DNA from: Laetmonice hystrix
Lineage: Eukaryota
DNA length: 64,000 bases
Assembly: GCA_965235115.1 (NCBI GenBank)
Contig: OZ249436.1
Span: 13,950,001 to 14,014,000 of the forward strand
Direction: 5' to 3'
The position numbers and the translations under genes were made by a program. Shown piece after piece: positions 5,974 to 50,928 of this stretch; within the stretch, counting starts at the first letter, position 1; every line of letters begins with the position of its first letter. The notes below the pieces were generated by a model. That model was not told the DNA's origin. It was given only the letters and a program-made list of their open reading frames with translations, and made no database searches.

Positions 5974-7379
5974 GTAAGTAACGACCACAGAGCCCCCTGG
6001 TGGCGGCGAGCATCTGGAGCATCCGTCTGGGCGATCCCAGCACGGCCATATCACAAACATTGCGACTTGTGGGCTATTTATGTACACCGTGTAGGTGGTA
6101 AGGCATGATACATTTCTTTGGCAATTTGACGATGTTTTTAAAGTCATGCATATTTCATCTGCCCTTCGTAACACAGAGTTTTACGTTGCAAAGTAGTTTA
6201 GCAGCATTTTAATGATGTAGCAAAATATTCGACAGACCAATTCTACCCTATGTAACAATGCAGGAAGGTAGAAACAGAAGGGCAAAATCTAAAAAGATAA
6301 TGTTAATATCATACTAGCTTCGCAAGTAACGATGCACAATGCGATACGAACTATTTATTCAACGAGTGCTATGCTGAAGATTCGCAGTATAATAACATGA
6401 TTTGATGCCATACTTGGCCGACAGTTACGATACGCATGCGTCATTGTGACCTGATGAGCAGTAAAACAAAACGTTCCGAGTAAGACGAGTAAAATACGAA
6501 GAACATTTAATTGTATGAATTGTATGTTTTTCACACTCTACAGGAAAGTGGCACTCAAGAAACGCAACAACAGGCTCGCAGCCTTGGCGCCTACAATTTC
6601 ATATTAATGCGCTTTCTTCCCTCTGTTTACCATTTCAAAGACAGGTTGAAGATTGTGGATAAATGGATAAGATGATAACTAAGATAACAACTCACATACA
6701 GCTGGAGCAGAATGGAGTTATATGAATGTAATCACTCGACTGCTGAAAGCCGGCAGTGTCAAGGAGTACTGTCGGCTTCCAACACTGCCCTTTCTCACGA
6801 ACCCTAGGGTTGGGAGGGAGGCAGAGTCTATGCACTGATCTCCACCTATTCCCGCCCTCACCCTTCTAAAACTACCCCGACACTTCGTATTATAGTTGGC
6901 TTCCTGTCTAACACACCATGTGTTTATGTTTTGTTTTGTTTCGCATGTTGTCTGGCTCCGACACCTAGAGAATATATTGTTTGTTCACTGAATTTATCCT
7001 CCAGTATTACGTCTTACCGTTCACTTTGAGTTATATCAGCACGCATCGACTCAATGGGCAATTTCAAAATATTCAAACACATAGGTGCACCATGGTGCAT
7101 CATGTGTAACCGATAAACGAATCTGGCGCATGGAAAAACCTTCTGGGTTGTATTGTTCCATTCTCTGGCAAAACCCAACCTTTATTGAGCCTGTGTGTGC
7201 TATCATTTGATAATTGTTTCATGCCAAGCTTGTCGCAACTGCATGAAGGATATTGTTTGATCAAAGGTGTCTCCGAGTCGTCCCCGTGGCGCTTTCCTAC
7301 GTACAATGATGTAGTTATGTCATGTTACAATAATTTCTCGGAGTCTGTGCACACCGTTTGTGGATTCTGACAGAGGAAA

Positions 7380-7940
7380 GACATGGGTCATATGAAACTG
7401 ACACAAATTATACACGATTACTCGACATGGGTCATATGAGACTGACACAAATTATACACGATTATTAGACATGGGTCATATGAAACTGACACAAATTATA
7501 CACGATTATTAGACATGGGTCATATGAAACTGACATAAATTATAAACGATTACTAGACATGGGTCATATGAAACTGACACAAATTATACACGATTTCTAG
7601 ACATGGGTCATATGAAACTGACAAATTATACACGATTATTAGACATGGGTCATATGAAACTGACAAATTATACACGATTTCTGGACATGGGTCATATGAA
7701 ACTGACAAATTATACACGATTTCTGGACATGGGTCATATGAAACTGACAAATTATACACGATTTCTGGACATGGGTCATATGAAACTGACACAAATTATA
7801 CACGATTTCTGAACATGGATCATATGAAACTGACACAAATTATACACGATTTCTAGACATGGGTCATATGAAACTGACAAATTATACACGATTTCTGAAC
7901 ATGGATCATATGAAACTGACACAAATTATACACGATTACT
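7380..7940. repeat. Minisatellite, 42/44-bp unit, about 13 copies (nAChR intron)
   Basis: GACATGGGTCATATGAAACTGAC(AC)AAATTATACACGATT. Confidence 0.95.
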
Positions 7941-9195
7941 ACTACGGGAGACATCCAGATGTGAAGCCGTGAAAATGATGGCGATTTCACACGTATAGTT
8001 CCTTTTTACGGATACAGTCTTTGTGCGAACATTCTGGCTGTCACCGCCAGTCTCTGAAATATTCAAGTTTTTTCAAATGAACAAGACAATGAGACAATGA
8101 AAGTAGATCATTCAATATCCTTATTGTTGTCGATATTCCGTTAGTTCTAGTTGCAGAACTCTACAGCTGCCGTGTTTCCCTGCACGTTTTCTCCATGTGA
8201 TCCTGATTTCTATTCCTTTATTTTGCATGTACCCTTGTATTATGTATCTTTATTTTGTGAGGAATTCTACCACAGCACTATGGGCAGTCTGTGGGACAGA
8301 AACCTGGGTTTATTGCAAGCATTCTCTGCTGTCTGATCCACACCCACCCTTGCTGTAATATATATTGCAGTGCCGACGGCAATTATGAAGTAACATTGAT
8401 GACAAAGGCCACCCTGTACCCCGACGGTCGCGTACACTGGGAGCCTCCTGCTATCTACAAAAGTTCTTGCACGATAAACGTTGAGTTTTTCCCATTCGAC
8501 GAACAACTATGTACTTTGAAGTTTGGTTCTTGGACCTACGATGGCTACCAAGTGAAACTGACACAAATTATACACGATTACTACTACGGGAGACATCCAG
8601 ATGTGAAGCCGTGAAAATGATGGCGATTTCACACGTATAGTTCCTTTTTACGGATACAGTCTTTGTGCGAACATTCTGGCTGTCACCGCCAGTCTCTGAA
8701 ATATTCAAGTTTTTTCAAATGAACAAGACAATGAGACAATGAAAGTAGATCATTCAATATCCTTATTGTTGTCGATATTCCGTTAGTTCTAGTTGCAGAA
8801 CTCTACAGCTGCCGTGTTTCCCTGCACGTTTTCTCCATGTGATCCTGATTTCTATTCCTTTATTTTGCATGTACCCTTGTATTATGTATCTTTATTTTGT
8901 GAGGAATTCTACCACAGCACTATGGGCAGTCTGTGGGACAGAAACCTGGGTTTATTGCAAGCATTCTCTGCTGTCTGATCCACACCCACCCTTGCTGTAA
9001 TATATATTGCAGTGCCGACGGCAATTATGAAGTAACATTGATGACAAAGGCCACCCTGTACCCCGACGGTCGCGTACACTGGGAGCCTCCTGCTATCTAC
9101 AAAAGTTCTTGCACGATAAACGTTGAGTTTTTCCCATTCGACGAACAACTATGTACTTTGAAGTTTGGTTCTTGGACCTACGATGGCTACCAAGT
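7911..9195. repeat. 642-bp direct tandem duplication (2 copies)
   Basis: 7911-8553 matches 8553-9195; no mismatches seen by eye. Confidence 0.93.
8371..8551 (+). pseudogene. Truncated duplicate of the first 181 nt of the large nAChR exon, with its acceptor
   Basis: Identical by eye to 9013-9193 (offset 642). Then runs into minisatellite-derived sequence and reaches a stop at 8612-8614. Confidence 0.9.
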
Positions 9196-10030
9196 CGATC
9201 TGAAACACATAGGTCAGGAAGCCGCGGGTGTCGGTGACCTCGATATCATATCTGATGGCATCGACCTCAAGGACTTCTACCGCTCCGTTGAATGGGATTT
9301 ACTTAGCGTTCCCGCTCGCAAAAACGAAAAGTACTACACCTGCTGTAGTGAACCGTATCCCGACATAACGTTTAACATAACAATGAGAAGAAAGACACTG
9401 TTCCATACGGTCAACCTGATCATCCCCTGCGTGGCTATCAGTTTCCTCACCGTACTTGTATTTTATCTGCCGTCAGACAGCGGCGAGAAGATTACTTTGT
9501 GTATCTCCATTCTGCTTTCGCTCACCGTTTTCTTCCTACTGTTGGCGGAGATCATCCCACCGACTTCCTTAGTCGTGCCTCTCATCGGCAAATACCTACT
9601 CTTCACCATGATCCTCGTTACGCTTTCCATCATCGTCACCGTCATCGTGCTCAACGTCCACTTCCGTTCGCCAGCCACGCACACCATGTCACCGTGGGTA
9701 CGTAAGGTCTTTCTCAACATCCTGCCGCGTCTCCTCATCATGCGCCGGCCACACATAGACAGGGACAGGGCGCCCAAGGTCGTCGTTCGTACCTGTAACG
9801 GCGTGGAGATACGCGACTCGTACGGCGACGGTACACGCCTGTCGGCAGACCTGACTTTTGACAACACAGGAACCTATTCAGGCATGATGCAAGGCGCCAC
9901 TGAGGACCTAGATACGGACCTGGACGCCAACATGCGAGCCAGGGCGTATTACACCCCGGAGGTGGTGAAAGCTATAGAAGGGGTGCGGTATATAGCGGAA
10001 CATTTAAAAGAGGAGGACGATGCATCAAAT
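9013..10030 (+). CDS. nAChR alpha subunit, large exon: Cys-loop, loops B and C, TM1-TM3, M3-M4 loop
   Basis: gcag|T acceptor and AAT|gtgagt donor. Contains Cys-loop [20 protein letters not shown], vicinal cysteines YYTCCSEPY (alpha subunit) and SGEKITL (cation-selective), then three hydrophobic helices. Confidence 0.98.
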
Positions 10031-12567
10031 GTGAGTAGAACGGTGGCACGAAGGTAATTAGTTGTAACCGACATCCCTTTGCTTCGCCCACAAAGGTTAC
10101 TTTTATGTATAACCTTGCAAAACACAATCTGCTCCGCCTCCTTTCTTTTTCTGTTTTTAACATGTTTCTTTTTTTAGCGATGAACAAACTGGTTTTATGT
10201 CTGGTCGCCATACGCCGTTGAAGCCGGTCAAAGAAAGTGGTTTTTGGTCGGTCGTATTGCTTTGGTAATAGGTTGGGGTGCGGGTAGAAGCCAACAGTCG
10301 CGCCTTACATGGAAGGGCGTGAAGCAATCAGCTGATCCAGGCCAACAATGTGTATTTGGTCCCTTTAAAGCAAACGGTCTCAAATGAAATTACACCCTTC
10401 TTGGGCCGAACCCGAAACTACTTTTTTGACCTGAAACTTAAAGCGGTGGACCAATCCCCTCCGACAACACGCTATACCTGCAGGGGTCCTTTCCAGCCCC
10501 TTTAACAACACGGAGGCCATAGGTGTCACGGCACATATAAGGACAATTCATTTACTTAATGCCCGCTAAAGTGGGTAGAGGGCCTTCTTAAAGGTTGTGT
10601 TGGCCACGGACAGCTCGGCGACTGACGTCTTTTGATGGGTGAAGGCTCCTTATCAGACAGAATTCAATTAGGCAACATGTGATGGGGGAGTTCTAAGCCC
10701 TTTGAAATCCCGGATTAATGACGTTATCTTGGGGTGTTTCACTGTCTGACTTACCAATGTGTGTGCCCAGCTTGACTACAAGATATAAACGGCCAAAGGT
10801 CTTTTAAACAACTGATACATTAGGTTAGACAGAACCCCACACAGGCGAAAGGAGCCGTTTCGTGCTGGGTGCCCAGTTTGGTGGAGTTGTCAAAGCGCCG
10901 GGCGTCTTGGTTGCTGTTCCAACATTGCTTTAAGACCGTCTGTTTGACTGTTTTCACGGTCATCCATACTCACGAATGACGATATAAGCCATCGGTGTTA
11001 TATGAATTCGTATCCTACCAGTATTTTCTTAGGAATAAATGCCTTATAGTTTGCATTTTCAAAAGTGCGTCGGATTATAGTTAATATTTATCTTGGATTA
11101 TCTGGAGCCTGCTTTCCGATTCATAATAGATGGTAAAACCGGCTGTAAGCGCTTCATGAATTCATACTGAGTTCCTTTCACAAAATCCTAGTCCGAAGAC
11201 CTGCGCACTGTCATGCTATGAGCCTTGGTATGAATCTGTGGGTTTACTGATACATTCATACAATCCCTTCCATCGATCAATATCCCTCTAGCATTCATAG
11301 AAGTAATCTTATTTTAAACAACCGATAACGCACTTGCAGAACATTGAAGAAATCTGGCAGAAGAAGTCTCTGGCTTTCTTGCGTCTTTTTATAAACTCCT
11401 AAGTTTGCTAAGCACGGACCAGTCTTTGTATACATGTACGTGACACGTGACTGATGCCTCCAGCCTTAATTCGAACCTCCTAGATATACTGCGTGGCAAT
11501 CCCAAGAAAAACCTCCCCCGATGATGCTCCTAAGTTCCGTGTTGAAGACTGTTATTTACTCGACCTTCACGGCCGCCTTCCCAGGGGTAGAACATGGTGA
11601 TAATAGGTTCTATTTCTCCCCAAGACCCACGTCCCTAGCCAGCGTCCTTGGATGGCCTACTTTGTGATTGTCCTCAGATTTATCACGGAAAATCCCATTC
11701 CAATATGGTCGTTTTGCGGTCGAGGAAGACCGTGCTTGTAAATGAGTAGTCCCCACAGTAGTCGGGGCCGTGTCGGGATGTGGTGGAGGAAGAGCGCGTT
11801 GCCCTGGAGGACTAGAATTGTTAGCGGTCGGAGACGGCTTGGATGAGCCTGGTTTGGCTAGGATCGAACATGACTATGCACTAAAGTTGCGTGGACCTAC
11901 AAGGCTGCTGCAACGTGCAGTGACTCGCAAACCACCAATTTAAAGGCAATCTCAGCAATCCGTGAAGTTAGCTCGCCATTTTAAAATTTTACCATAAAAT
12001 ATCTCATGGTCTGTTCGTTCCGCCCAGGCCCTATCTCAATCAATTTGCCACGTATCGCAGGTGCAAAGCCTAATCAGTAATTGCCGAATTAGTTATTACC
12101 CAAATGTGTTACATGAAAACTATCTCTGGCAGCGATTGAAAATATTCAAATACGATGGCAAATGGGAAAGTCGTCATTAACATCGTCTCAAAGGGGCAGC
12201 ATAATGAAAGCTTGGTGAATTCTAGCGAATGTAACGCACCAACAATTAGGCCCTTTATTCTGCATACAGCCTTCCTTTAAAAACCTTCAAATTTCATCAC
12301 TCATCTATCTTCCTTAGTCAATATCAAAGTACATTTATATAAGTGTTTGCAGTGAACCGTTTTCTTGACGTATTTTAAGTGTAATATTTGTAACCTGCAG
12401 GGAAAGTTTCCTCCCAATAGACTTTGAGAGTCCGGGAGGAACAACCAAGGTCATAAGGTATTAATCTTGAAGGGGCAACCTTTAAGCTGACTTTCGGTTC
12501 TTCCTTCTATTCCAGGACGTTATTAATTAGACAATTTCGATTAATGTTGAGTCCTGCTCCCTTTCAG

Positions 12568-19411: not shown

Positions 19412-20146
19412 ATACCACGACGACTCACACAAGGCCCTGTTCACGTTTATAATACCATGCACGACGACTCACACAAGGCCCTGTTCACGTTTACAATACC
19501 ACGACGACTCACACAAGGCCCTGTTCACGTTTAGAATACCACGACGACTCACACAAGGCCCTGTTCACGTTTACAATACCACGACGACTCACACAAGGCC
19601 CTGTTCACGTTTACAATACCACGACGACTCACACAAGGCTCTGTTCACGTTTACAATACCACGACGACTCACACAAGGCCCTGTTCACGTTTAGAACACA
19701 AGGCCCTGTTCACGTTTACAATACCACGACGACTCACACAAGGCCCTGTTCACGTTTACAATACCACGACGACTCACACAAGGCCCTGATCACGTTTACA
19801 ATACCACAACGACTCACACAAGGCCCTGTTCACGTTTAGAATACCACGACGACTCACACAAGGCTCTGTTCACGTTTACAATACCACGACGACTCACACA
19901 AGGCCCTGTTCACGTTTAGAACACAAGGCCCTGTTCACGTTTAGAATACCACGACGACTCACACAAGGCCCTGTTCACGTTTAGAATACCACGACGACTC
20001 ACACAAGGCCCTGTTCACGTTTAGAATACCACGACGACTCACACAAGGCCCTGTTCATGTTTAGAATACCACGACGACTCACACAAGGCCCTGTTCACAT
20101 TTAGAATACCACGACGACTCACACAAGGCCCTGTTCACGTTTAGAA
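19412..20146. repeat. Minisatellite, 40-bp unit, about 19 copies
   Basis: ACCACGACGACTCACACAAGGCCCTGTTCACGTTTAGAAT. Confidence 0.95.
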
Positions 20147-22003: not shown

Positions 22004-25000
22004 GTAAGCAGCCTATAAAACTTACAACGAAATAAACTCCTTCTTGGCACTTGTATAGAGATATCCCTTTTCCCTCTTGGAAGATATATAAAAAGGGCGG
22101 TATTCGAAAAAAGATGTCGTTATCTCTATTCTAGATGTAGAGATAGGAGAAAATGAAAGGACATACCTTCATTTCTCCTTTATTCTGGACGTTAGATAGA
22201 CTCTTGGTTAACCGACTTCACTCCTCTCTCGACGACAGGATAAGCATATAGTTTGTTATAAGTGATTCAAAGATCAGTTTTATACCATGTATAGACACCA
22301 TGCGCCTCTGAAACCGTCTTCCTTAACCTCGGGGGTTGGATGCCATCAATTGGTAGTGATACATCATCAAACTTACAACGTATAACTGACATCTCTGAAA
22401 GAGCCATCGCTTAGGCGCGTTCCCCACACACACAGACGCAGCTGAAAACATTTGTGTTTTGAAGGCAGGTGCACATGCTCCACCCCATATCCGACATGGG
22501 GGTGGTACGCTTAAATACCCCGTACCTTCTTCTGCCCGTGAAAGCGGGTGCGTTAGACGTATCCTTCAATGATTAAAAGGATTTTATAATTAGGAAACTG
22601 TGTCACGGCAGAGCCGGGAAATAATAATGGTAGGGCGTCAAATCAGAGAGTTCATTTTGATGTACTCTAATCTTAATGGCAAATAGGCAAAAACTGCATA
22701 GTTGTTTCCAGTAAAGAACCGGCCATGGTCTCTGTGTGCGACATAGTGCGATTTGCTGGCTTCGTTTCCCTACTGCGCAGGCCCACCAGCACACCGGATA
22801 TCCGACCAATCAACTGCGCCCGTTCGAAGAGATGCCGGGACCAAAGGGGCATATTTTCATCGGGACACTCTGGGACTACGTCAAGAAAAATGGATTCAGG
22901 TTTAACAAGATGTTTGAGGTATGTCCCCTACCGCCTGTCCTCTGGGGGATCTGTAAATACGGTATTCAACCGACTCCAAATTATCCTTCAATTCAAGTGG
23001 GTGGTCGTTAAGGTTTTCTTTGGAAAAAAACACATTCATTATGGCCCATTTTCCCCCACTTAAGGGATAAATTAAGGTCGGTGGTGTTTCCTGAGAGCTT
23101 CATAAAACATAATTTACATGTTATTAAAAGGCCTTTATGAGATCGGTTGCCAGACGCGGGGGGCCTTGCGGAGGTGGGGGGTTGTTGAGAGGGAGGTGGT
23201 GCCAGTAGTCTGACAACATGCTGATTGAAACCCTTTCCGTCCCTGTCTCCATGTACAGGCCATGCAGGCCCGGGCCAGCCAGTACGGCCCTGTGTACAAA
23301 GAGAAGATCGCCAACAGGACAGCCGTTATTGTGTCCGACCCGGCTGAGTATTCTAAAGTCATTCGTGTTGACGGGAAGTTCCCACATCGTATTGAAATGG
23401 AACCTCTGGCCCACTACCGGCGGACTCGCAACCTCAGTCTCGGAACTGTCAGTTCGTGAGTGACCTTTACAAAAACAGGACATTTGTAATCCGGATGTAC
23501 GTCATTGATGTATCACAATGACAAATTAGCATTCAGCACCGTCGTCTACACTACGAATTTATAGAAGAGGGTAGTTCCTCTTTGTCCAATTGAGAAAAAT
23601 CTTCGGAAGAGAATTCATCGACATAATTATTGGGTTTGGTCCACACGGTTCCTTAGAAAGTCGGTCAACTATGTACTGCCTCATAATCAATGGCTATATG
23701 GAAGTACATTATCGTACTTGGAGTAAATGCAGCTGAAAATAACACAATTGCGAATAATTACGTTATATTTTGTATGGTTCCTTTTATTTGAATCTTTAAT
23801 ATCTACTTTTATTTCTTGTGCCATTTTACAATCGAAGTCAAGGCGAGGAGTGGCATCGACATCGTACTGCTCTCAGTAAAAAAATGCTTCGACCCAAGGA
23901 AGTTCTCTCTTACTGCGATGCTATGAACACTGTAGCCGACGATTTCATTCTCCACCTCAAGAAAATATGCCAACCAAACGGGATTGTACTTGGTCTGGAA
24001 ATGCAGTTCTTCCGTTGGGCTCTCGAATGTATGTACTATCCATAATCATTATAATATAGCATTTAGCCAAACGGAGATTTGGGTATGCAATATTAATCAG
24101 TAAAAGGTAATCCACATTTTGTGGTGACTTCATCTAAATACCCAACATTGTAACCAGATCACAACCACTTGATGAAATACCGTGCGAAATCTTTCTGATT
24201 GCCAAACTTCAGATATACGTCCTACATAACCTTCCTGCACTCGGGCAATGCCAAGGCATGACCTATATCATCCCCATTGAAAATTCCATGTGTAGTTTAA
24301 TCGAGCTATTGTTGTCATTCCATTTAATTTATGTCTGGCTTGCATGACTTGTGTAATCTAGCTATAGGCATGGTGTTGTTCGAGGACAGAATCGGATGTC
24401 TGAACGAACCCCCCGACCCTGACACACAGACATATTTGTACCACCTCATCGGATTCTTCAGCTTCATGCAGCCGTTAATGTACAACGTACCCATCTACAA
24501 GGTGCTACCTACCGCCACCTGGCGGCGGTACAGTCACCATGCCGACGAGGTCCTCAGAATCGGTCAGACCTTCGTCGACAAGGTAGGAAACATTCGTTAT
24601 AAATAATCTTAGGTCTTTCAAGGACAACATATTTCAAAGCCTTCATTTACTTTATTGTGGGCATCATAATCAGTGGATACGTTTGTAAATGACACGTCTG
24701 GAATTCGATGTCCCAGTTCAACATTCTGGTTGTCCCCTCCCCTGGAAAAATTCCTTGCGCCACCCAAACATGAGTTTTATAATCGATACTCATGAGGCAC
24801 ATAATAAGTGACTACCCATTGTGCTCAGGTACATGACTACCCATTGTGCTCAGGTACATGACTATCCATGTGCTCAGGTACATGACTACCCATGTGCTCA
24901 GGTACATGACTACCCATGTGCTCAGGTACATGACTACCCATGTGCTCAGGTACATGACTACCCATGTGCTCAGGTACATGACTACCCATGTGCTCAGGTA

Positions 25001-28000
25001 CATGACTACCCATGTGCTCAGGTACATGACTACCCATGTGCTCAGGTACATGACTACCCATGTACTCAGGTACATGACTACCCATGTGCTCAGGTACATG
25101 ACTACCCATGTGCTCAGGTACATGACTACCCATGTGCTCAGGTACATGACTACCCATGTACTCAGGTACATGACTACCCATGTACTCAGGTACATGACTA
25201 CCCATGTACTCAGGTACATGACTACCCATGTACTCAGGTACATGACTACCCATGTGCTCAGGTACATGACTACCCATGTACTCAGGTACATGACTACCTT
25301 CCACCGGATTAGGGGGAAGGCTGATAGAGATAACGTCCCCGACTGAACCATCTAACATCGATAATTTACCAGGAAGGTCAGATCAAGGAGGTCATAAATT
25401 TACAAGCTGAATGAGAAGGTTCAAGTAGTAAAGCTGCAACAAGACTTCTATATGAATGCCCACCACCCGGCACATGTATGTACATAGTGGCGCGGCGTGC
25501 TTGGATCCCAAGTTATATTTAGTGTACGCGGTCATATAGAGGGCCCCTATATAGGCCGGCCACTACACTTAGGCCCATTTCCTGCGACCATGTCACACTA
25601 ATGGTTGCTTCTTTGACGTTTGGGTTGTCGTATATGGCATTATTCAGAGTGTTCATATAGGTCCTCCCACGTTCCATTAATCCCGATTGATTACACGACT
25701 GTGTGTGTTATCCTGCATTCCCTTTGACTCGGCATCGACCTGACCAATTTGATCACCTCTCCTACAGACCCCTCCTCCTAGAGCCACCCCCTCACATATA
25801 GTGCCTCCAAACTCCTATTTTTACATACTACTTACACGTGGGGCCGGTAGACGCGGCCCAGACACACGACTGTCGCCGGCGGAGACAGTAATTATGTGCA
25901 CGTTATGGATGGCCTGCCTTGATGCTATGTTACCTCCATTAATTGACAGACTGGCTGGGATGGCCGTGATAGTTAATTACACGGCCGGCTAATGACACAG
26001 CTAGCGTAATGTCAAATGACAGCCTCCTTAGGTCATCACTGACCAGTTGTCAAGGGACAAGGGTCAGTGTAGCAGTGTTACTTGTGGTCAGTGGTCAGTG
26101 CCACAGGGCCGCCCTTCAGGTTTCTCCTCCATCCTTTTGTAACGTATGCGCTCATATACTCTGAGGAGGCAAAGTACTACTAGAATGTACAATTGGGAAT
26201 GTATCGAGAAAATAAAAGCCTGTCACCCTAGTGGTCATTTAGACCTGGTGTGAGACATGTAACCTAATATAAAACGTATTTTGCTCCGACCCCGGCATTA
26301 TTTCTCCCCAATTACCGCTGCTTGCAGAGGGTCGAAGCCTTGAGGACAACCGCCGAGCGTGGGGTCAGAGAAGGTGAATACGAGGCCATGCTGACCTACT
26401 TACTGACCCAGGAGTCGTTGACACCGGAGGAGGTTAATGCCCACGCCATTGATATGATGACCGGGGGTGTGGAAACGGTACGACCTGTCATAATTAACCC
26501 CTAATGACAGCGCAGCGTCACATGGCCACCATGACATCGATTCTTGGCACGATTCTTCACAAGAGCATGTGACATATTCCGTTCTTAGTAGGCCTAATAA
26601 TCCTAACAGGTCGATGAAATATACGCTTATCCAATCTGATCATATATTTTAAGCAATTTTGTTTTCACCATTTCCAAGTTTCACCAACTTTCCATGGTAT
26701 AATAATTTTTCATCATCTTACAATCATAAACTATCAGGCATGATACTGCTACAAACTAACCTTGACCCATTCCTACCGTTCTTACGCTATGGGGATAACT
26801 CGTACAGACCTCCAACGCCACGCTCTGGACGCTACTCTGTCTGTCAAAGACGCCTGAGGCACAGCAGACCTTACGTCGCGAGCTGGACGAGGTCTTGCCG
26901 GGCAAAGGTCCGGTAACTGTTGACAAACTGACTGACCTCCGCTACATGAAGGCCTGTCTCAAGGAAACATTCAGGTACGTCTACACGGTAACTGTTGACA
27001 AACTGACTGACCTCCGCTACATGAAGGCCTGTCTCAAGGAAACATTCAGGTACGTCTATACGGTAACTGTTGACAAACTGACTGACCTCCGCTACATGAA
27101 GGCCTGTCTCAAGGAAACATTCAGGTACGTCTATACGGTAACTGTTGACAAACTGACTGACCTCCGCTACATGAAGGCCTGTCTCAAGGAAACATTCAGG
27201 TACGTCTATACGGTAACTGTTGACAAACTGACTGACCTCCGCTACATGAAGGCCTGTCTCAAGGAAACATTCAGGTACGTCTATACGGTAACTGTTGACA
27301 AACTGACTGACCTCCGCTACATGAAGGCCTGTCTCAAGGAAACATTCAGGTACGTCTATACGGTAACTGTTGACAAACTGACTGACCTCCGCTACATGAA
27401 GGCCTGTCTCAAGGAAACATTCAGGTACGTCTATACGGTAACTGTTGACAAACTGACTGACCTCCGCTACATGAAGGCCTGTCTCAAGGAAACATTCAGG
27501 TACGTCTATACGCTAACTGTTGACAAACTGACTGACCTCCGCTACATGAAGGCCTGTCTCAAGGAAACATTCAGGTACGTACGTCTACACGGTAACTGTT
27601 GACAATCTGACTGACTGACGGACCATCCCCGATGCCTAATGAGTGCCATCTGTAATGGGACTGCTCCGTTGTTGGGCCATCGGGAGACAATTTGTGTATT
27701 TTCACATCGCCGATGACTAACGACATTAGTGAAGAATACAAGTTCCTTTCTGGGAACGGAACAGTGGTGACGTATAAAGTGAGGTTACGTTTGACTTCAA
27801 ACGGTGAAGGAAGATTTTGTAAATCGTGTAGTAGTAAGGGTTCACGTATCAGTTAATTATCAGACAGGATCACCAAAATCGATGACAGGCTTTGGTGATT
27901 TCCGCGTCAAGACGCCCTTCTATTGCTGCATGTTTAGCGTGTTGTTGAGTAAAATACATGCATACATGCATGGTTGCATGACTGCCTCCAGTCTAGTCCA

Positions 28001-31000
28001 TTTAGCTAACATCTGTTCACGTGACATCAATTTTATAACACGGATTCCAATCCGATTCTCGGGTATTTCACGGAAAGTTTCATTCGGCTAGAACAAATCA
28101 CCAAGCCTTCGCATGCTTCTGAACTATTGATCAACCCAGGGCAGATTTGCTGTGATTAGGTTAGCAGACTAACGGCATATTTCCATACTAATTCAACAGC
28201 TACATTCGACAGCCACAAATGCTGTTCTCGACTGCATAAGTATCGGATTTTTCATTCTTACAAACGGTCGGTAGTTTTCATTCAAATTAGAGTTTTAATT
28301 ATTCTCTTCAGCAAAACAAAATGTACCGATGTTCAGGAACATGTCGACATGCATGTATTCCCCTCGAAAAGTTAGAACTGCCGCCACCCACCTCACATAT
28401 CCCCTTACACACCCACCCCCTGACACACCCTCTCTCAGACACCCTGCCTCCTCGCCACCCGACCCCACCACCAACCAAACACCCCACCCTACCACCAACC
28501 AAACACCCCACCCCACCACCAACCAAACACCCCACCCTACCACCAACCAAACACCCCACCCCACCACCAACCAAATCCCCCGACCCCACCACCAACCTAG
28601 CCCCCGACCCCACCACCAACCAAACACCCGTCCCCACCACCAACCAAACACCCCACCACCAACCAAACACAGGACCCCACCACCAACCAAATCCCCCGAC
28701 CCCACCACCAACCTAGCCCCCGACCCCACCACCAACCAAACACCCGTCCCCACCACCAACCAAACACCCCACCACCAACCAAACACAGGACCCCACCACC
28801 AACCAAACACCCCACCCCACCACCAACCAAACACCCGACCCCACCACCAACCAAACACCCCACCCCACCACCAACCAAACAGCCCACCCCACCACCAACC
28901 AAACACCCCGCCACCAACCAAACACCCCACCCCACCACCAACCAAACACCCCACCACCAACCAAACACCCCACCCGACCACCAGCGTCTCGCTGACCGAT
29001 CGACACATTGTAACAAGTTGTTAAAGCCTAGACCTGTAGATCGATATGGTCGATCATGATGGCTATATGTACTCCTCTAATAACCTCACGGCAGAGTGAG
29101 TTGGTCACTTCACGTCACACGAACCTGTCAGACAAGTATCTCTTCCTTTAGCTAGACCTCGCACCACTGTGTCCTAATTATTGTCCTACGGTAGGCAGGT
29201 AGAGTAAGATCGTTCGGTCGGGAGGTTGCACACATCACCACCATCTCATCACATGTACGGACTACTTACCGGCGCGGAACGATATACCGCTCGGATACCG
29301 GCGGGCGGCTATCGGCGCTCAACAAGCTTTGAACGCTGGAAAGATTTTCAGACACATTTACCATTCTATGAGGCCGAATGAATTTCTCGCCGTAATTCCG
29401 CAGCTCTCTGCCTACTCTTGGGTATATGAAGAATCAGTATTGACTCGGAAGTCGAGCTCAGCGTCTCATTATAAAGAGAATATTTAACAGGCCACTTTCA
29501 CATCGAGTTTACCATCGAACAGCGGGATTTATTCACTCCTACATAAAACGTTTCACTTTGATGTCTGAATGGTAATGTCCCGGCAGTAATGCATTTTTCC
29601 ATTTAGTATACCAGAAGTCGTTGGTTGCTATTCGGACATATTCACTCGTCAAGTTTTTAACTTTGATTACATCTTCAATTGTTAAAACATTGAATTTCAC
29701 TTTTTATCGGACCACCTTTTAAAGTAAAGTAGTCAAAGCATTTCTTGGCAATTATACATTCAAGGGATTTGGAATAGCACCATTCACACTGAACAATAGA
29801 GAGCTTCACACTAAGATATAATTACTGTATTTTTGTCTCTCCATGGAACCATAGCTGTGGATGAACGCATCCTACAGAACCTTTGGTTCCTTCAATCCTA
29901 GATTGCAGCATATCACAGACACATTTTGCAAAGCAAAATTGAAACAGCAGTTGGTAAATCTACCTTTCCGTCGATATTTATATATGCAGTTTTAGGTGGT
30001 TATATAGCAAAGGAAATGGTATCTGTTGGAAAATATATTTTGTTGATTTTGTTGTACATTTTGTTATTTTTAAGGCTGTACCCGATTACTTTCGCAACTA
30101 GTAGAATAATCGCCAAAGATCTCGAGCTCGGAGGTTTCCATGTTCCTGCCGGGGTAAGTACGAATTGCGATCTGTTCCGTTTATTATTTTTATTTATTTT
30201 TTTTTATTAAATTTTATTTTTTATTTTTAATCCTCGTAGAGTACGCTGACATAATTATTATGCTGCGCAGTTTGTATTTATGTAATATTGAATCTTGTTC
30301 CAAAGGTTTTTCTCCCCTTCACTTCAAAATGACGTGTACATCATGCACATCGTATAACGACGCTTGGTAGAGTTTCCCGATACGTCGATAGTATTGACAT
30401 TTTCTCGCCTGAATGTATTCGTCATGACTTTCGTTTCTAATTTCAATGTGACAAGCCACAAAATTGCCTTCCCCAAATCATTGCAGTGGGAATGTTTATA
30501 TATGTTCAGTTTGAGAGAAACATTTTGGTTGATGATTCTGGTTCTAACTGTCAGTGAGACAGCAGCGTTCATTCTGTTCACGTCACTACGGGATGAAGGT
30601 CTGGCCTGGTTCTCAATCCCATCTCCCAGGTTACCAGTCGGACAGCCAAGATACCCGAGATAACAGAGATACCCCCCCCCCCCGACCAATCTGAGCCCCC
30701 ACCACCACCACCACCAGTCCGAGTCCACCCTGACCAATCTGAACCCCCCCCCCCCCACCACCACCAATCCGAGTCCCCCCCCCCCCCACCGCCAATCTGA
30801 GCCCCCCCACCAATCTGAGCCCCTACGACCAGTCGAGTCCCCCCGGACCAATCTGGACCCACGACCAATCTGACCCCACGACCAATCTGAGCCCCCCCCC
30901 CCACCAATCTAAAGAGAGACGTTGGGTGAACGGTTGCGGCATGTGTTGCCACCACAGAATGTCTGTACTGTAGGGGGGAGTCTACAAGGAGCAAAGCCCC

Positions 31001-31747
31001 CGGCATCTTTCCTTGTGAGACGTTACTTTCACCGATACTATACGGCCGGCCCGGTCGGTCCCAGAGCGTTGTCCAGACTCTTTATCTACTTACTTGGCGG
31101 AAATTGTCAGGCGTTAGAGGGGAGAATCCCTCCTCCTGGACCATTGAGCCTTTATACCTCGTCCTAAGACACTCAATGTGAACGAGTAGGGTCGGGAACG
31201 ACCCCAAGCTGATGGCTCAATTGTCAAAGTCCGCGTGAAAACTAATTAAAGTTCGGCTGGTTATTTGGAAAGGGGACATCAGGTCGACGTAATTCGGGGT
31301 AGGGAAGCTCGATGGCCCTGTAAACAGATTCAGACAGGGCGTATCTGAAGCTGATGACACACATTCACAGAGATTATCGTTAGCAATTGTTAATTTACCG
31401 AAGTGTTTACAATTTGGCGTGTGCCATGTATACTGCAGACCCATGTTCAGGCGAACCTTTACGGGATGGGCCATGACCCAGCCCTGTTTGAGGACCCCGA
31501 GGTGTACCGGCCCGAGCGCTGGCTCCGAGGAGGAGCCGAGGATGACAACACGGCCGCCTTCACCAATCTACCGTGGGGACACGGGGCACGGATGTGTATC
31601 GGTGAGTATAGTCACACTCAGTCATGTGTTGTCTTTTCTCGAGGTGTCTATCCCTGCAGGGTATTCATCTACCTCTACATAAATAATGTCTTCTTCTTCT
31701 ACTTCTTCTTCTTCTTCTACTTCTTCTTCTACTTCTTCTTCTTCTAC

Positions 31748-31779
<32 letters not shown>

Positions 31780-33233
31780 CTTCTCTAAACATTTCTGCGG
31801 GTACCATTGGAACGTATAACTGCAGTAATATTATAGTGTATGGCTTCGATCGGAACATTATAAATTGAAGTTTAAAGTGTGACAATCAGTAAAGGAACAA
31901 CACCTAACACAGTAGCACGTTCCCGACTCCCGCTGACCGACATAATACACAAGCACGTTCTTGTATCTCTATAGGACGTCGAATCGCAGAGCAGGAGATC
32001 TATATTGCGGTTTCCAAGGTAAGCAGAGCTCACTTCAGGCAACTGACCGGTACCATGACGGAAGTGAATGCCACAAGTAAAAAATAAAGTAAAAAATTCT
32101 CTTCTGCTCCCCAGTGCGCTGCCATTAATTAGTTGATCAGGTAGTTGAAATGTTCTCGGACAGACAATGATAGATTATCCCGTACTCGCTCACGAGTGAA
32201 GGATGACATCGTCGTTATAGTTAGTCCATACGTTTAAATCGCGGTATTGCACATATATTATTAGAAGTTGCTCTCTTTGACAGTCACGGCCGGTGATAAA
32301 TCCATCGATGCCAATCTATCACGATTAAGTTGATCCCTGTTCTAAATTATCGTCCATCTTGCATATAGAGACTTTGAAAACGGTCATAAATAATTGAAGG
32401 CCGTGAGAGGACTCGATGGCGCCATGATCGTTCCGCCGCACAACGTCCTTATCCCCTCGCCTTCCTACCCCGTGTCACCTTGTCTGGCACGCAGTTTCTA
32501 GGCCCCTGCCATTTGGCAATCAATCAAAGTATCCACCGATGTCATCATTGTTGCATTAGTCGGAATATTCCACTTGTCACCTCCACGCTCTCCGAGCGGC
32601 AGCCGCCGGCTTGTCACTGATCGGTAGAATGTCGGATCTGGCAGTCGTTAGATTGGTAGTCACTAACACCAATCATACATCACCTGCCAGTCAAACGTCC
32701 ACTTCCGGTGGACGTAGAGGTCACCTACGTCATCGACACGTCACAAACAGGCGTCAACTGTCGACTGGTTTCTTCTACAGGAATTATGGCGGCCAACTGC
32801 GCACGCGTTCGCCGGACCGAAAAACTTGCGATTTGGGTTTCTGGGGGATTATGGTTTATAATGTGACTGGTAATGCGAGTTCACGTAACACCACTGGAGC
32901 CATTTCAAACGTCGTGTGCTGAGATATATAGTTGCTAATGGAAAGCTAACATAGTGGGAATTATTAGGGGACGGGAACCCGTTGTCAGGGACACTCTAGC
33001 CGTCTGTCCTCGATCGACCGGCGCCATCAGTTTTTGTCAATCAGATTGAGGATTGATAGATCATTACATGGTCACCAGCACTCAGATCAATTAATCCATG
33101 GTTGGAGTTTTTCTTTCAGATCATTCAGAATTTCTCGCTCACTCACGATGGAGACTTGCCGGGACCAGTACTGAAGACGGTGATGACACCAGATAAACCA
33201 GTCAGACTTATCTTCAACACCGTGTCCGGTTAG
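21884..33233 (+). CDS. CYP10: Mitochondrial-clan cytochrome P450, CYP10-like; join(21884-22003,22781-22918,23259-23455,23838-24028,24362-24582,26328-26477,26808-26974,30075-30153,31439-31601,31975-32018,33120-33233), 527 aa
   Basis: All introns are GT-AG with consistent phases (total 1584 nt). Motifs: GEEWHRHR, I-helix GGVETTS, K-helix KETFR, PERW, heme WGHGARMCIG. Segments such as LYPITFATSR, THVQANLYGM and WGHGARMCxGRRIAEQE match Lymnaea CYP10 as recalled (not searched). Confidence 0.93.
22781..22918 (+). CDS. CYP10: CYP10 exon 2 (..LRPFEEMPGPKG..GTLWDYVKKNGFRFNKMFE)
   Basis: Mito-clan PFxxxPGP motif; cag| acceptor and |gtatgt donor. Confidence 0.92.
23259..23455 (+). CDS. CYP10: CYP10 exon 3
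   Basis: YGPVYKEKI..GKFPHRIEM; cag| acceptor and |gtgagt donor. Confidence 0.93.
23838..24028 (+). CDS. CYP10: CYP10 exon 4 (C-helix GEEWHRHR)
   Basis: WxxxR motif; AAG acceptor and |gtatgt donor; phases fit. Confidence 0.9.
24362..24582 (+). CDS. CYP10: CYP10 exon 5
   Basis: SIGMVLFEDRIGCL..FMQPLMYNVP; tag| acceptor and |gtagga donor. Confidence 0.92.
24809..25298. repeat. Minisatellite, 24-bp unit, about 20 copies (CYP10 intron 5)
   Basis: CATGACTACCCATGT(G/A)CTCAGGTA. Confidence 0.95.
26328..26477 (+). CDS. CYP10: CYP10 exon 6 (start of I-helix)
   Basis: ..AIDMMTGGVET; cag| acceptor and |gtacga donor. Confidence 0.92.
26808..26974 (+). CDS. CYP10: CYP10 exon 7 (end of I-helix, J- and K-helix), ending at the first of nine donors
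   Basis: TSNATLW..YMKACLKETFR; cag| acceptor and AG|gtacgt donor. Confidence 0.9.
26911..27615 (+). repeat. Minisatellite, 75-bp unit, 9 copies plus a partial copy, spanning the CYP10 exon 7/intron 7 boundary
   Basis: Unit encodes VTVDKLTDLRYMKACLKETFRYVYT; CAG|GTACGT recurs every 75 nt from 26974 to 27574. Confidence 0.97.
28456..28982. repeat. C-rich minisatellite, about 20-24-bp variant units (CYP10 intron 7)
   Basis: CCACCACCAACCAAACACCC variants. Confidence 0.9.
30075..30153 (+). CDS. CYP10: CYP10 exon 8
   Basis: (R)LYPITFATSRIIAKDLELGGFHVPAG; donor |gtaagt. Confidence 0.93.
30680..30910. repeat. ACCAATCTGAGCCCCC / poly-C degenerate repeat (CYP10 intron 8)
   Basis: Repeated accaatctga followed by C runs. 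Confidence 0.75.
31439..31601 (+). CDS. CYP10: CYP10 exon 9 (PERW and heme cysteine)
   Basis: THVQANLYGM..RPERWLR..WGHGARMCI; donor |gtgagt. Confidence 0.95.
31686..31784. repeat. (CTT)n trinucleotide microsatellite (CYP10 intron 9)
   Basis: TTC/CTT run interrupted by CTA. Confidence 0.92.
31975..32018 (+). CDS. CYP10: CYP10 exon 10
   Basis: (G)RRIAEQEIYIAVSK; tag| acceptor and |gtaagc donor. Confidence 0.93.
33120..33233 (+). CDS. CYP10: CYP10 exon 11 (terminal)
   Basis: IIQNFSL..VMTPDKPVRLIFNTVSG*; tttcag| acceptor; AATAAA at 33283. Confidence 0.92.
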   Translation: MIQNFSLTHDGDLPGPVLKTVMTPDKPVRLIFNTVSG

Positions 33234-33594
33234 GGCACAGCTGGCATGAGGAAGGACGTCTGAGGACAGCTCAGACTCTGTGAATAAAACAAGGCAGATT
33301 CTGAAGAAATATTTAGTTTAAAAGAGACCATCAATTTCTCGAGCCGCAGCCAATTTTGTGTCTGGACACATGTGTCGCAGCTTGCCAGGACGGTTGAGTG
33401 CAAGTTATGCCCAGACAGAGAGGGGAGAAAGTGGGCATAAAGAAAGAAGAGGGGACGGGGGGTACATAATGAAGGTAATATATTACGCAACAATAATCAG
33501 GGCTGTAATCCTCAGAACTACGGAAACGGTCCAGAATAATGTAACAATAATCATGTCTATAGCTAGAGTTTATGAAAGCTCTTGGTTTATCGTT

Positions 33595-35107
33595 TGATCA
33601 GATAGTAGGAAGACATCGTCACAATAATCTATGGTTGACTTTGGTTTATATCTACTCACTATAATCTGATCAGATAGTAGGAAGACATCGTCACAATAAT
33701 CTATGATTGACTTTGGTTTATATCCACTCACTATAATCTGATCAGATAGTAGGAAGACATCGGCACAATAATCTATGGTTGACTTTGGTTTACATCTACA
33801 CACCATAATCTGATCAGATAGTAGGAAGACATCGTCACAATAATCTATGGTTGACTTTGATTTACATCTACTCACTATAATCTGATCAGATAGTAGGAAG
33901 ACATCGTCACAATAATCTATGGTTGACTTTGGTTTATATCTACTCACTATAATCTGATCAGATAGTAGGAAGACATCGTCACAATAATCTATGATTGACT
34001 TTGGTTTACATCTACTCACTATAATCTGATGAGATAGTAGGAAGACATCGTCACAATAATCTATGGTTGACTTTGATTTACATCTACTCACTATAATCTG
34101 ATCAGATAGTAGGAAGACATCGTCACAATAATCTATGGTTGACTTTGGTTTATATCTACTCACCATAATCTGATCAGATAGTAGGAAGACATCGTCACAA
34201 TAATCTATGGTTGACTTTGGTTTATATCTACTCACCATAATCTGATCAGATAGTAGGAAGACATCGTCACAATAATCTATGATTGACTTTGGTTTATATC
34301 TACTCACTATAATCTGATCAGATAGTAGGAAGACATCGTTACAATAATCTATGGTTGACTTTGATTTATATCTACTCACTATAATCTGATCAGATAGTAG
34401 GAAGACATCGTCACAATAATCTATGGTTGACTTTGGTTTACATCTACTCACCATAATCTGATCAGATAGTAGGAAGACATCGTCACAATAATCTATGATT
34501 GACTTTGGTTTATATCTACTCACTATAATCTGATCAGATAGTAGGAAGACATCGTCACAATAATCTATGGTTGACTTTGGTTTACATCTACTCACTATAA
34601 TCTGATCAGATAGTAGGAAGACATCGTCACAATAATCTATGATTGACTTTGGTTTACATCTACTCACCATAATCTGATCAGATAGTAGGAAGACATCGTC
34701 ACAATAATCTATGGTTGACTTTGGTTTATATCTACTCACTATAATCTGATGAGATAGTAGGAAGACATCGTTACAATAATCTATGGTTGACTTTGGTTTA
34801 CATCTACTCACCATAATCTGATCAGATAGTAGGAAGACATCGTCACAATAATCTATGGTTGACTTTGGTTTACATCTACTCACTATAATCTGATCAGATA
34901 GTAGGAAGACATCGTCACAGTAATCTATGATTGACTTTGGTTTACATCTACTCACCATAATCTGATCAGATAGTAGGAAGACATCGTCACAATAATCTAT
35001 GATTGACTTTGGTTTACATCTACTCACCATAATCTGATCAGATAGTAGGAAGACATCGTCACAATAATCTATGGTTGACTTTGGTTTACATCTACTCACT
35101 ATAATCT
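33595..35107. repeat. Minisatellite, 72-bp unit, about 21 copies
   Basis: ATCAGATAGTAGGAAGACATCGTCACAATAATCTATGGTTGACTTTGGTTTATATCTACTCACTATAATCTG. Confidence 0.96.
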
Positions 35108-49694: not shown

Positions 49695-50928
49695 CTCATT
49701 CACTGGTAAAAACCTACCTCTGCATATCACTACCCCAATCACTGGTGAATCCTACCTCTGCATATCACTACCCCAATCACTGGTGAATCCTACCTCTGCA
49801 TATCACTACCCATGCAATCACTGGTGAATCCTACCTCTGCATATCACTACCCATGCAATCACTGGTGAATCCTACCTCTGCATATCCTCACTATCTTTGT
49901 TCTCTAATGTAGGAGTGGTGACAACATTGAGGGAGATGTTGACAACACCACCCCCACGTCTGCCCGTCACTACCCCAATCACTGGTGAATCCTACCTCTG
50001 CATATCCTCACTATCTTTGTTCTCTAATGTAGGAGTACAACATTGAGAGAGATGTTGACAACACCACTCCCACGTCTGCCCGTCACTACCCCAATCACTG
50101 GTGAATCCTACCTCTGCATATCCTCACTATCTTTGTTCTCTAATGTAGGAGTGGTGACAACATTGAGGGAGATGTTGACAACACCACTCCCACGTCTGCC
50201 CGTCACTACCCCAATCACTGGTGAATCCTACCTCTGCATATCCTCACTATCTTTGTTCTCTAATGTAGGAGTGGTGACAACATTGAGGGAGATGTTGACA
50301 ACACCACTCCCACGTCTGCCCGTCACTACCCCAATCACTGGTGAATCCTACCTCTGCATATCCTCACTATCTTTGTTCTCTAATGTAGGAGTGGTGACAA
50401 CATTGAGAGAGATGTTGACAACACTCCCACGTCTGCCCGTCACTACCCCAATCACTGGTGAATCCTACCTCTGCATATCCTCACTATCTTTGTTCTCTAA
50501 TGTAGGAGTGGTGAGAACATTGAGGGAGATGTTGACAACACTCCCACGTCTGCCCGTCACTACCCCAATCACTGGTGAATCCTACCTCTGCATATCCTCA
50601 CTATCTTTGTTCTCTAATGTAGGAGTGGTGAGAACATTGAGGGAGATGTTGACAACACCACTCCCACGTCTGCCCGTCACTACCCCAATCACTGGTGAAT
50701 CCTACCTCTGCATATCCTCACTATCTTTGTTCTCTAATGTAGGAGTGGTGAGAACATTGAGGGAGATGTTGACAACACCACTCCCACGTCTGCCCGTCAC
50801 TACCCCAATCACTGGTGAATCCTACCTCTGCATATCCTCACTATCTTTGTTCTCTAATGTAGGAGTGGTGAGAACATTGAGGGAGATGTTGACAACACCA
50901 CTCCCACGTCTGCCCGTCACTAACCCAA
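49695..50928. repeat. Compound minisatellite: 35-38-bp subunits followed by about 8-9 copies of a 117/120-bp unit
   Basis: TCACTGGTGAATCCTACCTCTGCATATC core; 40-aa period in the + ORF 50043-50999. Confidence 0.93.

What the first reader, a model, noticed from the sequence alone, without database searches (positions are those of the whole stretch)
26808..27615. CYP10 exon 7 ends in nine near-identical, in-frame splice donors, each preceded by a K-helix copy
Seen: a 75-bp unit (about 59 nt of exon plus 16 nt of intron) is repeated nine times. CAG|GTACGT lies at 26974, 27049, 27124, 27199, 27274, 27349, 27424, 27499 and 27574. The unit is 25 codons with no stop, so every donor splices in frame to exon 8 and adds 0-200 aa in steps of YVYTVTVDKLTDLRYMKACLKETFR. 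Known: ExxR of the K-helix is part of the structural ERR triad of P450s, and boundary-spanning VNTRs with multiple donors have a precedent (human CBS 31-bp VNTR). Inference: either one donor is strictly selected despite near-identical sequence, or copy number dilutes correct splicing and acts as a tunable dial on enzyme dose without triggering NMD.
Basis: partly seen in the sequence, partly recalled or inferred. Interest (0 to 1): 0.8.

Follow-up and report, generated by a model that had tools for sequence, protein, structure and literature searches.

The report
Repeated splice donors in P450 gene
A 75-base tandem repeat has copied the end of one exon of a cytochrome P450 gene, together with its splice signal, nine times into the next intron. 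The repeat is real, but it is a known and usually harmless kind, and which splice signal the cell uses could not be tested.

Summary
A 75-bp tandem array (26911-27615, 9.3 copies, 98% matches) starts inside exon 7 of an intact CYP10-like mitochondrial-clan P450 gene. Each donor joins exon 8 (30075) in frame, giving 509 to 709 aa with one to nine KETFR (K-helix) copies. One small correction: the unit is 64 nt of exon plus 11 nt of intron, not 59 plus 16.

Word depth in three runs of one sample is 5.7-7.9 times the flank, against 7.7 expected for nine copies. The array is therefore not an assembly expansion and probably sits on both haplotypes. Two orthologues (Owenia and an ENA contig) have the same 167-nt exon and donor position without an array. 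Units 2-8 are identical, so the array is young.

The structure is a known kind: a boundary-spanning minisatellite, like the amphioxus "mirages" and the human F7, LMNB2, PDGF, CBS and IFI6 arrays. In most of those only the first donor is used.

This scan has already noted several such arrays elsewhere in this genome. About 15% of the window is minisatellite. My best reading is a tolerated by-product, spliced mainly from the first donor (about 0.6).

The parts
26808..26974 (+). Exon 7 of the CYP10-like P450 as spliced from the first donor (167 nt). It encodes the end of the I-helix, helices J/J' and the K-helix KETFR, and ends with AG of the split Arg codon.
   Evidence: Translation. Pfam p450 positions 278-337, E 5.5e-34. 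Aligns to rat CYP24A1 3K9V residues 299-352. The same 167-nt exon with the same boundaries is found in Owenia and in an ENA contig, L016.
26911..27615 (+). 75-bp minisatellite: nine full units (64 nt exon end + 11 nt intron start) plus a diverged 26-nt partial tenth unit. Units 2-8 are 100% identical.
   Evidence: TRF. Unit table. Word depth 5.7-7.9x the flank in three runs of one sample. Unique in the 627-Mb assembly. No remnants elsewhere in the window.
26972..27580 (+). Nine identical donor 9-mers CAG|GTACGT, spaced 75 nt apart. The first starts at 26972 and the ninth at 27572. Each matches the U1 consensus CAG|GTAAGT at 8 of 9 positions, the best match among this gene's donors.
   Evidence: Pattern positions and comparison with the gene's other donors.
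26975..30074 (+). Intron 7 as defined by the first donor (3100 nt, the longest intron in the gene). It holds the array, a dispersed-repeat fragment and a second minisatellite (28456-28983).
   Evidence: Gene model. TRF.
30075..30153 (+). Exon 8 (79 nt). Its first base G completes the Arg codon, then LYPITFATSR... follows. It is the single acceptor for all nine donors.
   Evidence: Sequence. Model. Homologue alignment is contiguous across the ETFR/LYP junction.
26328..26477 (+). Exon 6 (150 nt), ending in GGVET of the I-helix. Its donor is ACG|GTACGA.
   Evidence: Sequence. Model.
22736..33233 (+). Mapped part of the CYP10-like gene (exons 2-11). All introns are GT-AG. The motifs GGVETT, KETFR, PERW and WGHGARMCIG are intact, and the stop codon ends at 33233. 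The N-terminal exon 1 was not mapped.
   Evidence: tblastn with CYP10 homologues. Spliced model with an open frame.
27619..27716 (+). Fragment of a dispersed repeat family, truncated at both ends. It lies 3 nt after the end of the array.
   Evidence: Dozens of copies elsewhere in the genome at 75-97% identity. Alignment shows that other copies extend further on both sides.

Best explanation
This is a young minisatellite whose first unit straddles the exon 7/intron 7 boundary of an intact CYP10-like mitochondrial-clan P450 gene. It is a 'mirage'-type, F7-intron-7-type array.

A 75-bp segment (the last 64 nt of the exon plus the first 11 nt of the intron) was duplicated in tandem and then expanded by slippage or unequal exchange. 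The genome makes such arrays very often. The expansion reiterated a strong donor and the K-helix coding segment.

Inferred, not shown: the pre-mRNA is spliced mainly from the most upstream donor. That gives the normal P450 of about 510 aa (plus exon 1). The other eight copies would be removed as part of intron 7. On this reading the array is a tolerated by-product with at most a minor effect on splicing efficiency.
For: Shown:
- The array and its nine donors are real.
- It is multi-copy in raw-read words at about the assembled copy number. The ratios of 5.7-7.9 exceed the roughly 3.9 expected if only one haplotype carried the array, so it is probably on both haplotypes.
- With donor 1 the gene is intact, with all P450 motifs.
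- The 167-nt exon and the phase-2 donor after ETF-R are ancestral. They occur in Owenia and in an ENA contig, neither of which has an array.
- Homologues have a single K-helix running straight into (L/Q/I)YP.
- Units 2-8 are identical while the edge units differ. This is the usual pattern of recent internal homogenisation, and was also described for amphioxus mirages (PMC3087553).
- Twelve minisatellite arrays cover about 15% of the window, three of them in or just after this gene. One of roughly 20 exon boundaries being hit needs no special mechanism.

From papers:
- In F7 (37 bp x 5-9), LMNB2 (100 bp x 10-15) and PDGF (81 bp x 16-18), only the authentic upstream donor is used (PMC1557585).
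- Amphioxus Adh3 and globin mirages do not disturb normal splicing (PMC3087553).

Lead, not verified here: earlier scan notes report a 76-bp x 7 donor array in a TESK gene of this same genome whose assembled transcript uses the first donor.

Exon size: donor 1 gives a 167-nt exon, within the gene's range of 44-221 nt. Donors 5-9 would give 467-767 nt.
Against: There is no RNA evidence for this gene.

The donors are strong (8 of 9 positions match U1) and 75 nt apart. [quoted passage not shown] That predicts use of the ninth donor, not the first.

In F7 the donors are weak, and pseudo-sites with perfect consensus did shift splicing. In CBS and IFI6 the second and third donors are used as well.

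All sequence data come from one sample, probably the assembled individual.

The RNA fold of the array is no more stable than shuffled sequence (z -0.36). No structure distinguishes the first donor from the others.
Confidence: 0.6

Rival explanations
1. Several of the nine in-frame donors are used. The gene would then yield a ladder of P450 isoforms carrying 0-8 extra 25-aa J'/K-helix units. Copy number would set how much normal enzyme is made without triggering nonsense-mediated decay.
For: All nine donors have the same 9-mer and the same local context for 64 nt upstream and 11 nt downstream, and all are in frame. In human CBS and IFI6 the authentic donor plus the next two are used (PMC1557585 introduction). 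No RNA structure distinguishes the copies.
Against: Most natural cases show one donor only. No protein with repeated K-helices was found among 1.84 billion representatives or in the word search. That result is weak, because this species' own proteins appear to be absent from those libraries. The in-frame property is expected by chance in about a quarter of such arrays.
Confidence: 0.2
2. The intron-proximal (ninth) donor is used predominantly. The main product would carry a 200-aa insertion of eight extra J'/K-helix units before the functional K-helix. That product is either a tolerated surface excursion or a hypomorphic or null allele of CYP10.
For: With identical strong donors at least 45 nt apart, model substrates splice almost wholly from the intron-proximal site (PMC3413131). 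The donors here match U1 at 8 of 9 positions and are 75 nt apart. The local junction ...KETFR|LYP... is restored whichever donor is used.
Against: A 767-nt internal exon would be far outside this gene's exon sizes of 44-221 nt. Natural boundary-spanning arrays with similar periods (81 and 100 bp) use only the first donor. The array seems to be on both haplotypes of a live animal, and the rest of the gene shows no decay. ExxR is buried in the P450 core (established knowledge), so eight spare amphipathic copies would probably hinder folding. That last point is inference.
Confidence: 0.12
3. The array is an assembly expansion of a single exon end.
For: All data come from one sample, probably the one that was assembled. 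De Bruijn contigs cannot count copies directly.
Against: Word depth of the repeat-cycle contig is 5.7-7.9 times that of the unique flank in three runs, matching the 7.7 expected. The T-variant words specific to internal units exist in the reads. A 705-bp array is well within the reach of long reads.
Confidence: 0.03

Closest known systems
Human F7 intron 7 minisatellite (37 bp x 5-9), Borensztajn et al. 2006, PMC1557585
   Same: The first unit spans the exon 7/intron 7 boundary. The authentic donor is followed by identical pseudo-donors. Copy number falls in the same range.
   Different: The F7 unit holds only 4 nt of exon, against 64 nt here including a structural helix motif. F7 donors are weak (UGG|gugggu), whereas these are strong (8 of 9 positions). 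Spacing is 37 nt in F7 and 75 nt here. Most F7 pseudo-sites are out of frame. F7 usage is measured (first donor only); here it is unknown.
Amphioxus 'mirages' (Adh3; globins BflGb6 and BflGb9), PMC3087553
   Same: Minisatellite-like tandem duplication of an exon-intron boundary in an invertebrate with a repeat-rich genome. Units are 10-160 bp. Internal units are homogenised while edge units diverge. The phenomenon recurs in several genes of one genome.
   Different: Different phylum. Some mirages copy the 3' splice site. RT-PCR showed normal splicing there, and no RNA is available here.
Human CBS intron 13 31-bp VNTR and the IFI6 (6-16) intron 2 array
   Same: Boundary-spanning arrays with reiterated donors. 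They are the precedent for use of more than one donor.
   Different: They have much shorter units. Use of the first two pseudo-sites is documented (as cited in PMC1557585).
Human LMNB2 (100 bp x 10-15) and PDGF intron 4 (81 bp x 16-18) arrays
   Same: Unit length is similar to the 75 bp here, and the PDGF unit is also a multiple of three. Only the authentic donor is used (as cited in PMC1557585).
   Different: These are vertebrate genes. I did not check how much exon their units contain.
Other splice-donor arrays noted by this scan in the same genome (TESK 76 bp x 7, SLC22 x 23, TANC2-type 40 bp x ~24)
   Same: Same genome and same architecture. One has nearly the same period and copy number.
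   Different: Different genes. Those notes were not verified here. The CYP10 case is distinctive only in copying a named structural motif in frame.

Membership tests
Boundary-spanning minisatellite ('mirage' / F7 intron-7 type) | Head-to-tail array of at least 3 units of about 10-160 bp | tested here: met
   Period 75, 9.3 copies, 98% matches. Units listed.
Boundary-spanning minisatellite ('mirage' / F7 intron-7 type) | The first unit straddles the boundary of a genuine, conserved exon | tested here: met
   The array starts 64 nt before the donor of exon 7. The same 167-nt exon and phase-2 donor occur in Owenia and in ENA contig L016.
Boundary-spanning minisatellite ('mirage' / F7 intron-7 type) | The splice-site consensus is reiterated in the units | tested here: met
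   Nine identical CAG|GTACGT sites.
Boundary-spanning minisatellite ('mirage' / F7 intron-7 type) | Normal mRNA is made from the authentic site and the downstream copies are removed with the intron | not testable with these tools
   No RNA run holds the gene. The one read-laying run could only use DNA contigs.
Boundary-spanning minisatellite ('mirage' / F7 intron-7 type) | Copy number varies between haplotypes or individuals | tested here: inconclusive
   Depth ratios are 1.03, 0.73 and 0.82 of the homozygous nine-copy expectation. This is compatible with equal or somewhat shorter second alleles. Only one sample was available.
Cytochrome P450, mitochondrial clan, CYP10-like | P450 fold signature (Pfam PF00067) | tested here: met
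   Exon 7 scores E 5.5e-34. Exons 4, 5 and 9 also match.
Cytochrome P450, mitochondrial clan, CYP10-like | I-helix (A/G)GxxT, K-helix ExxR, meander PERF/W and the heme-binding Cys loop are all intact | tested here: met
   GGVETT, KETFR, PERW and WGHGARMCIG are present in the spliced model.
Cytochrome P450, mitochondrial clan, CYP10-like | At least 40% identity to named CYP10 proteins (the P450 nomenclature rule, from my own knowledge) | tested here: met
   50-56% identity over aligned exons to proteins named cytochrome P450 10 in Patella, Lottia, Mytilus, Lingula and Capitella. It is the best CYP10 match in its own genome.
Cytochrome P450, mitochondrial clan, CYP10-like | N-terminal mitochondrial targeting sequence | not tested
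   Exon 1 was not mapped. The model starts inside exon 2.
Regulated alternative 5' splice-site use giving in-frame isoforms | Transcripts from two or more of the donors | not testable with these tools
   No RNA data. No multi-K-helix protein in the libraries.

The most novel reading that the evidence does not exclude
The nine strong, equally spaced, in-frame donors are used in proportions that depend on copy number. A polymorphic minisatellite would then set the amount of normal CYP10 and produce P450 isoforms with extra K-helix units. That would be a heritable, NMD-free dose dial. It would also be a natural test between the 'most upstream' and 'intron-proximal' rules of 5' splice-site choice.
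Probability: 0.12. Interest if true: 0.6.

Novelty: new member of a known kind. Interest (0 to 1): 0.3.

Why it matters
If the first donor is used, as I expect, this is one more tolerated boundary-spanning minisatellite in a genome full of them. Its main practical lesson is for annotation: gene predictors may read through the open array and invent a P450 with up to nine K-helices.

Its modest scientific value is as a natural substrate for an unresolved question in splicing. Natural arrays such as F7, LMNB2 and PDGF use the most upstream of the identical donors. Model substrates with strong donors at least 45 nt apart use the one nearest the acceptor. Here the donors are strong, 75 nt apart and all in frame. 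A single RT-PCR would say which rule holds in a spiralian animal, without nonsense-mediated decay (NMD) hiding the minor products.

Tried and rejected
RNA evidence. Two run searches found only three runs of one sample and none on record as RNA (24300-33560, kind rna; 26808-27620, kind any). Donor use could therefore not be measured.

Protein with repeated K-helices.
- The word-based search with the 256-aa exon-7-plus-array frame found nothing.
- The exhaustive phmmer search found only single exon-7 equivalents at 60% identity or less. The rest were low-identity matches to unrelated repetitive proteins.
- The Patella vulgata 977-aa 'cytochrome P450 10' looked like a possible parallel. It is an N-terminal fusion model with a normal single K-helix.

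Own-species annotation. None of 120 CYP10 relatives exceeds 56% identity to the window's exons, so no annotated model of this gene is in the libraries.

Close-relative comparison by synteny from the neighbouring nAChR gene.
- The 94%-identical contig has no DNA on file.
- The 89%-identical one (L018) does not reach a CYP10 gene within 10 kb.
- Walking further failed because the called gene there does not translate under code 11.
- I stopped at that point.

RNA structure masking the downstream donors. The fold is no better than shuffled sequence (z -0.36).

Remnants of the unit elsewhere in the intron or window: none. Other copies in the genome: none.

Structure prediction of the long isoforms was not attempted.

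Full report
**What is in the sequence**

The stretch 26911-27615 is a head-to-tail array of a 75-bp unit: 9.3 copies, 98% matches, no indels (sequence read). CAGGTACGT occurs nine times on the + strand and nowhere else in the window. The last exon base falls at 26974, 27049 ...

The frame that starts at 26808 stays open to 27602. It reads TSNATLWTLL...KETFR followed by eight more units of YVYT-VTVDKLTDLRYMKACLKETFR.

One detail needs correcting. The periodicity begins at 26911, so a unit is 64 nt of exon plus 11 nt of intron, not about 59 + 16.

Units 2-8 are identical base for base. Three differences sit at the edges:
- Unit 1 has one substitution.
- Unit 9 has one substitution and a 4-nt GTAC insertion just after its donor. 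This closes the frame beyond the ninth donor.
- A diverged 26-nt tenth partial unit follows.

**The gene**

Homologue-guided mapping gives exons at 22736-22918, 23259-23455, 23838-24028, 24362-24582, 26328-26477, 26808-26974, 30075-30153, 31439-31601, 31975-32018 and 33120-33233. All introns are GT-AG.

The spliced frame is open and carries GGVETT, KETFR, PERW and WGHGARMCIG, so the gene is not decayed. Exon 1 was not mapped.

- Pfam calls it P450.
- The nearest solved structure over exon 7 is mitochondrial CYP24A1.
- The best relatives are proteins named cytochrome P450 10 in limpets, mussels, brachiopods and annelids, at 50-56% identity.
- It is the best CYP10 match in its own 627-Mb genome.

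Exon 8 begins at 30075 after ttaag. AG + G makes the Arg of ExxR, and LYP follows. Joined to exon 8, each of the nine donors gives an open frame of 509 to 709 aa with one to nine KETFR copies.

**Is the array real?**

Only three runs hold the region. All are from one sample and are kept as de Bruijn contigs.

Laid on 26400-28100, the unique flank contig stops at 26940, which is where words enter the repeat cycle. A 105-nt contig equal to one turn of the cycle has word depth 382.8 / 352.7 / 361.7. The flank depth is 48.2 / 62.3 / 57.3.

The ratios are 7.9, 5.7 and 6.3. The assembled sequence predicts 7.7 for that contig.

A single-copy locus is excluded. An array on only one haplotype would give about 3.9, so both haplotypes probably carry several units. 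This is the same individual as the assembly at best, so it is not population evidence.

**Ancestral state and age**

- In Owenia fusiformis the orthologous exon is also 167 nt. It starts with the same TSNA codons and ends ...TTTAG|GTACGC, with the intron in the same phase. That intron is about 195 nt and has no repeat.
- An unnamed ENA contig shows the same (CAG|GTACAG).
- A third contig lacks this intron altogether.
- Homologous proteins run from ETFR straight into (L/Q/I)YP.

One K-helix and one donor is therefore the ancestral state. The array is a lineage-specific, recent addition. Seven identical internal units with diverged edge units is the usual picture of ongoing homogenisation. The same picture was described for amphioxus mirages (PMC3087553).

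**Context**

The window is extraordinarily rich in minisatellites. Twelve arrays with periods of 20-225 bp cover about 9.5 kb of 64 kb, or 15%. Three of them are in or just after this gene.

With roughly 20 exon boundaries in the gene, one boundary inside an array is not more than random placement would give. No donor-specific amplification mechanism is needed.

The array is unique in the genome. A fragment of a dispersed repeat family (27619-27716) lies 3 nt past its end. That fragment is truncated on both sides. This may mark the event that cut the tenth unit, but I could not show it.

The stop-free multiple-of-three unit is expected by chance in about one such array in four (my estimate).

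**How it most likely works**

No RNA could be examined, so this part is inference.

Several points favour use of the first donor only:
- In human F7 (37 bp x 5-9) only the most upstream of the identical donors is used, and the pseudo-sites are functional but never compete.
- LMNB2 (100 bp) and PDGF (81 bp) behave the same way (PMC1557585).
- Amphioxus mirages leave splicing normal.
- Donor 1 gives an exon of ordinary size for this gene.
I did not verify this.

Several points count against it:
- The donors are the strongest in the gene (8 of 9 positions match U1) and are 75 nt apart.
- With identical strong donors at least 45 nt apart, model pre-mRNAs use the intron-proximal site almost exclusively (PMC3413131).
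- CBS and IFI6 use two extra donors.
- No RNA structure sets any copy apart.

I put about 0.6 on mainly the first donor, 0.2 on mixed use, 0.12 on mainly the ninth donor, and 0.03 on an artefact.

**Comparison and novelty**

This is a member of a known kind: a boundary-spanning minisatellite with reiterated 5' splice sites. The scan has already noted several in this genome.

This case adds three things. The exonic share of the unit is large and holds a named structural motif. All donors are strong. All are in frame, so minor products would escape NMD and be visible. That makes it a convenient test case, not a new mechanism.

**Organism**

The nearest named relatives of the neighbouring nAChR exon are nemerteans and annelids at 71-76% identity. 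The CYP10 gene is about equally distant from annelid, brachiopod and mollusc CYP10s. I would call the organism a spiralian, not specifically a mollusc.

Noticed in passing
window 27619-27716: Fragment of a short dispersed repeat family with palindromic CATCGGG/CCCGATG motifs. The genome holds dozens of copies at 75-97% identity. The fragment is truncated at both ends and starts 3 nt after the array. It may mark the event that cut the tenth repeat unit.
   Followed up: partly
window 24809-25298: A 24-bp minisatellite (about 20 copies, 98% matches) in intron 5 of the same gene. Each unit carries a donor-like CAG|GTACAT on the sense strand. It starts 227 nt after the real exon 5 donor, so it does not span a boundary.
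   Followed up: no
whole window (12 arrays, e.g. 7379-7941, 19412-20146, 33595-35107, 49688-50932, 60701-61934): About 15% of the 64-kb window is high-identity minisatellite with periods of 20-225 bp. A 72-bp x 21 array begins about 360 nt after the CYP10 stop codon.
   Followed up: partly
window 8933-10057 (+): A large exon of a nicotinic acetylcholine receptor alpha-like subunit (ligand-binding domain plus TM1-3). The best named hit is Lineus longissimus at 76%, and unnamed ENA contigs reach 89-94%. This suggests a spiralian nearer to nemerteans and annelids than to molluscs.
   Followed up: partly
L017 (Logan contig), 426-683: In this unnamed organism the CYP10 orthologue has exons 7 and 8 fused. 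The intron that carries the array here is absent there, so this intron position is not universal.
   Followed up: no
P0151 (Patella vulgata XP_055956236.1, 977 aa): The public model named 'cytochrome P450 10' has about 475 unrelated N-terminal residues in front of a normal CYP10. It looks like a fused gene model.
   Followed up: partly
L018 15794-16504: A gene called on this ENA contig of a related species contains three stops under code 11. The caller probably used another genetic code or a wrong frame.
   Followed up: no
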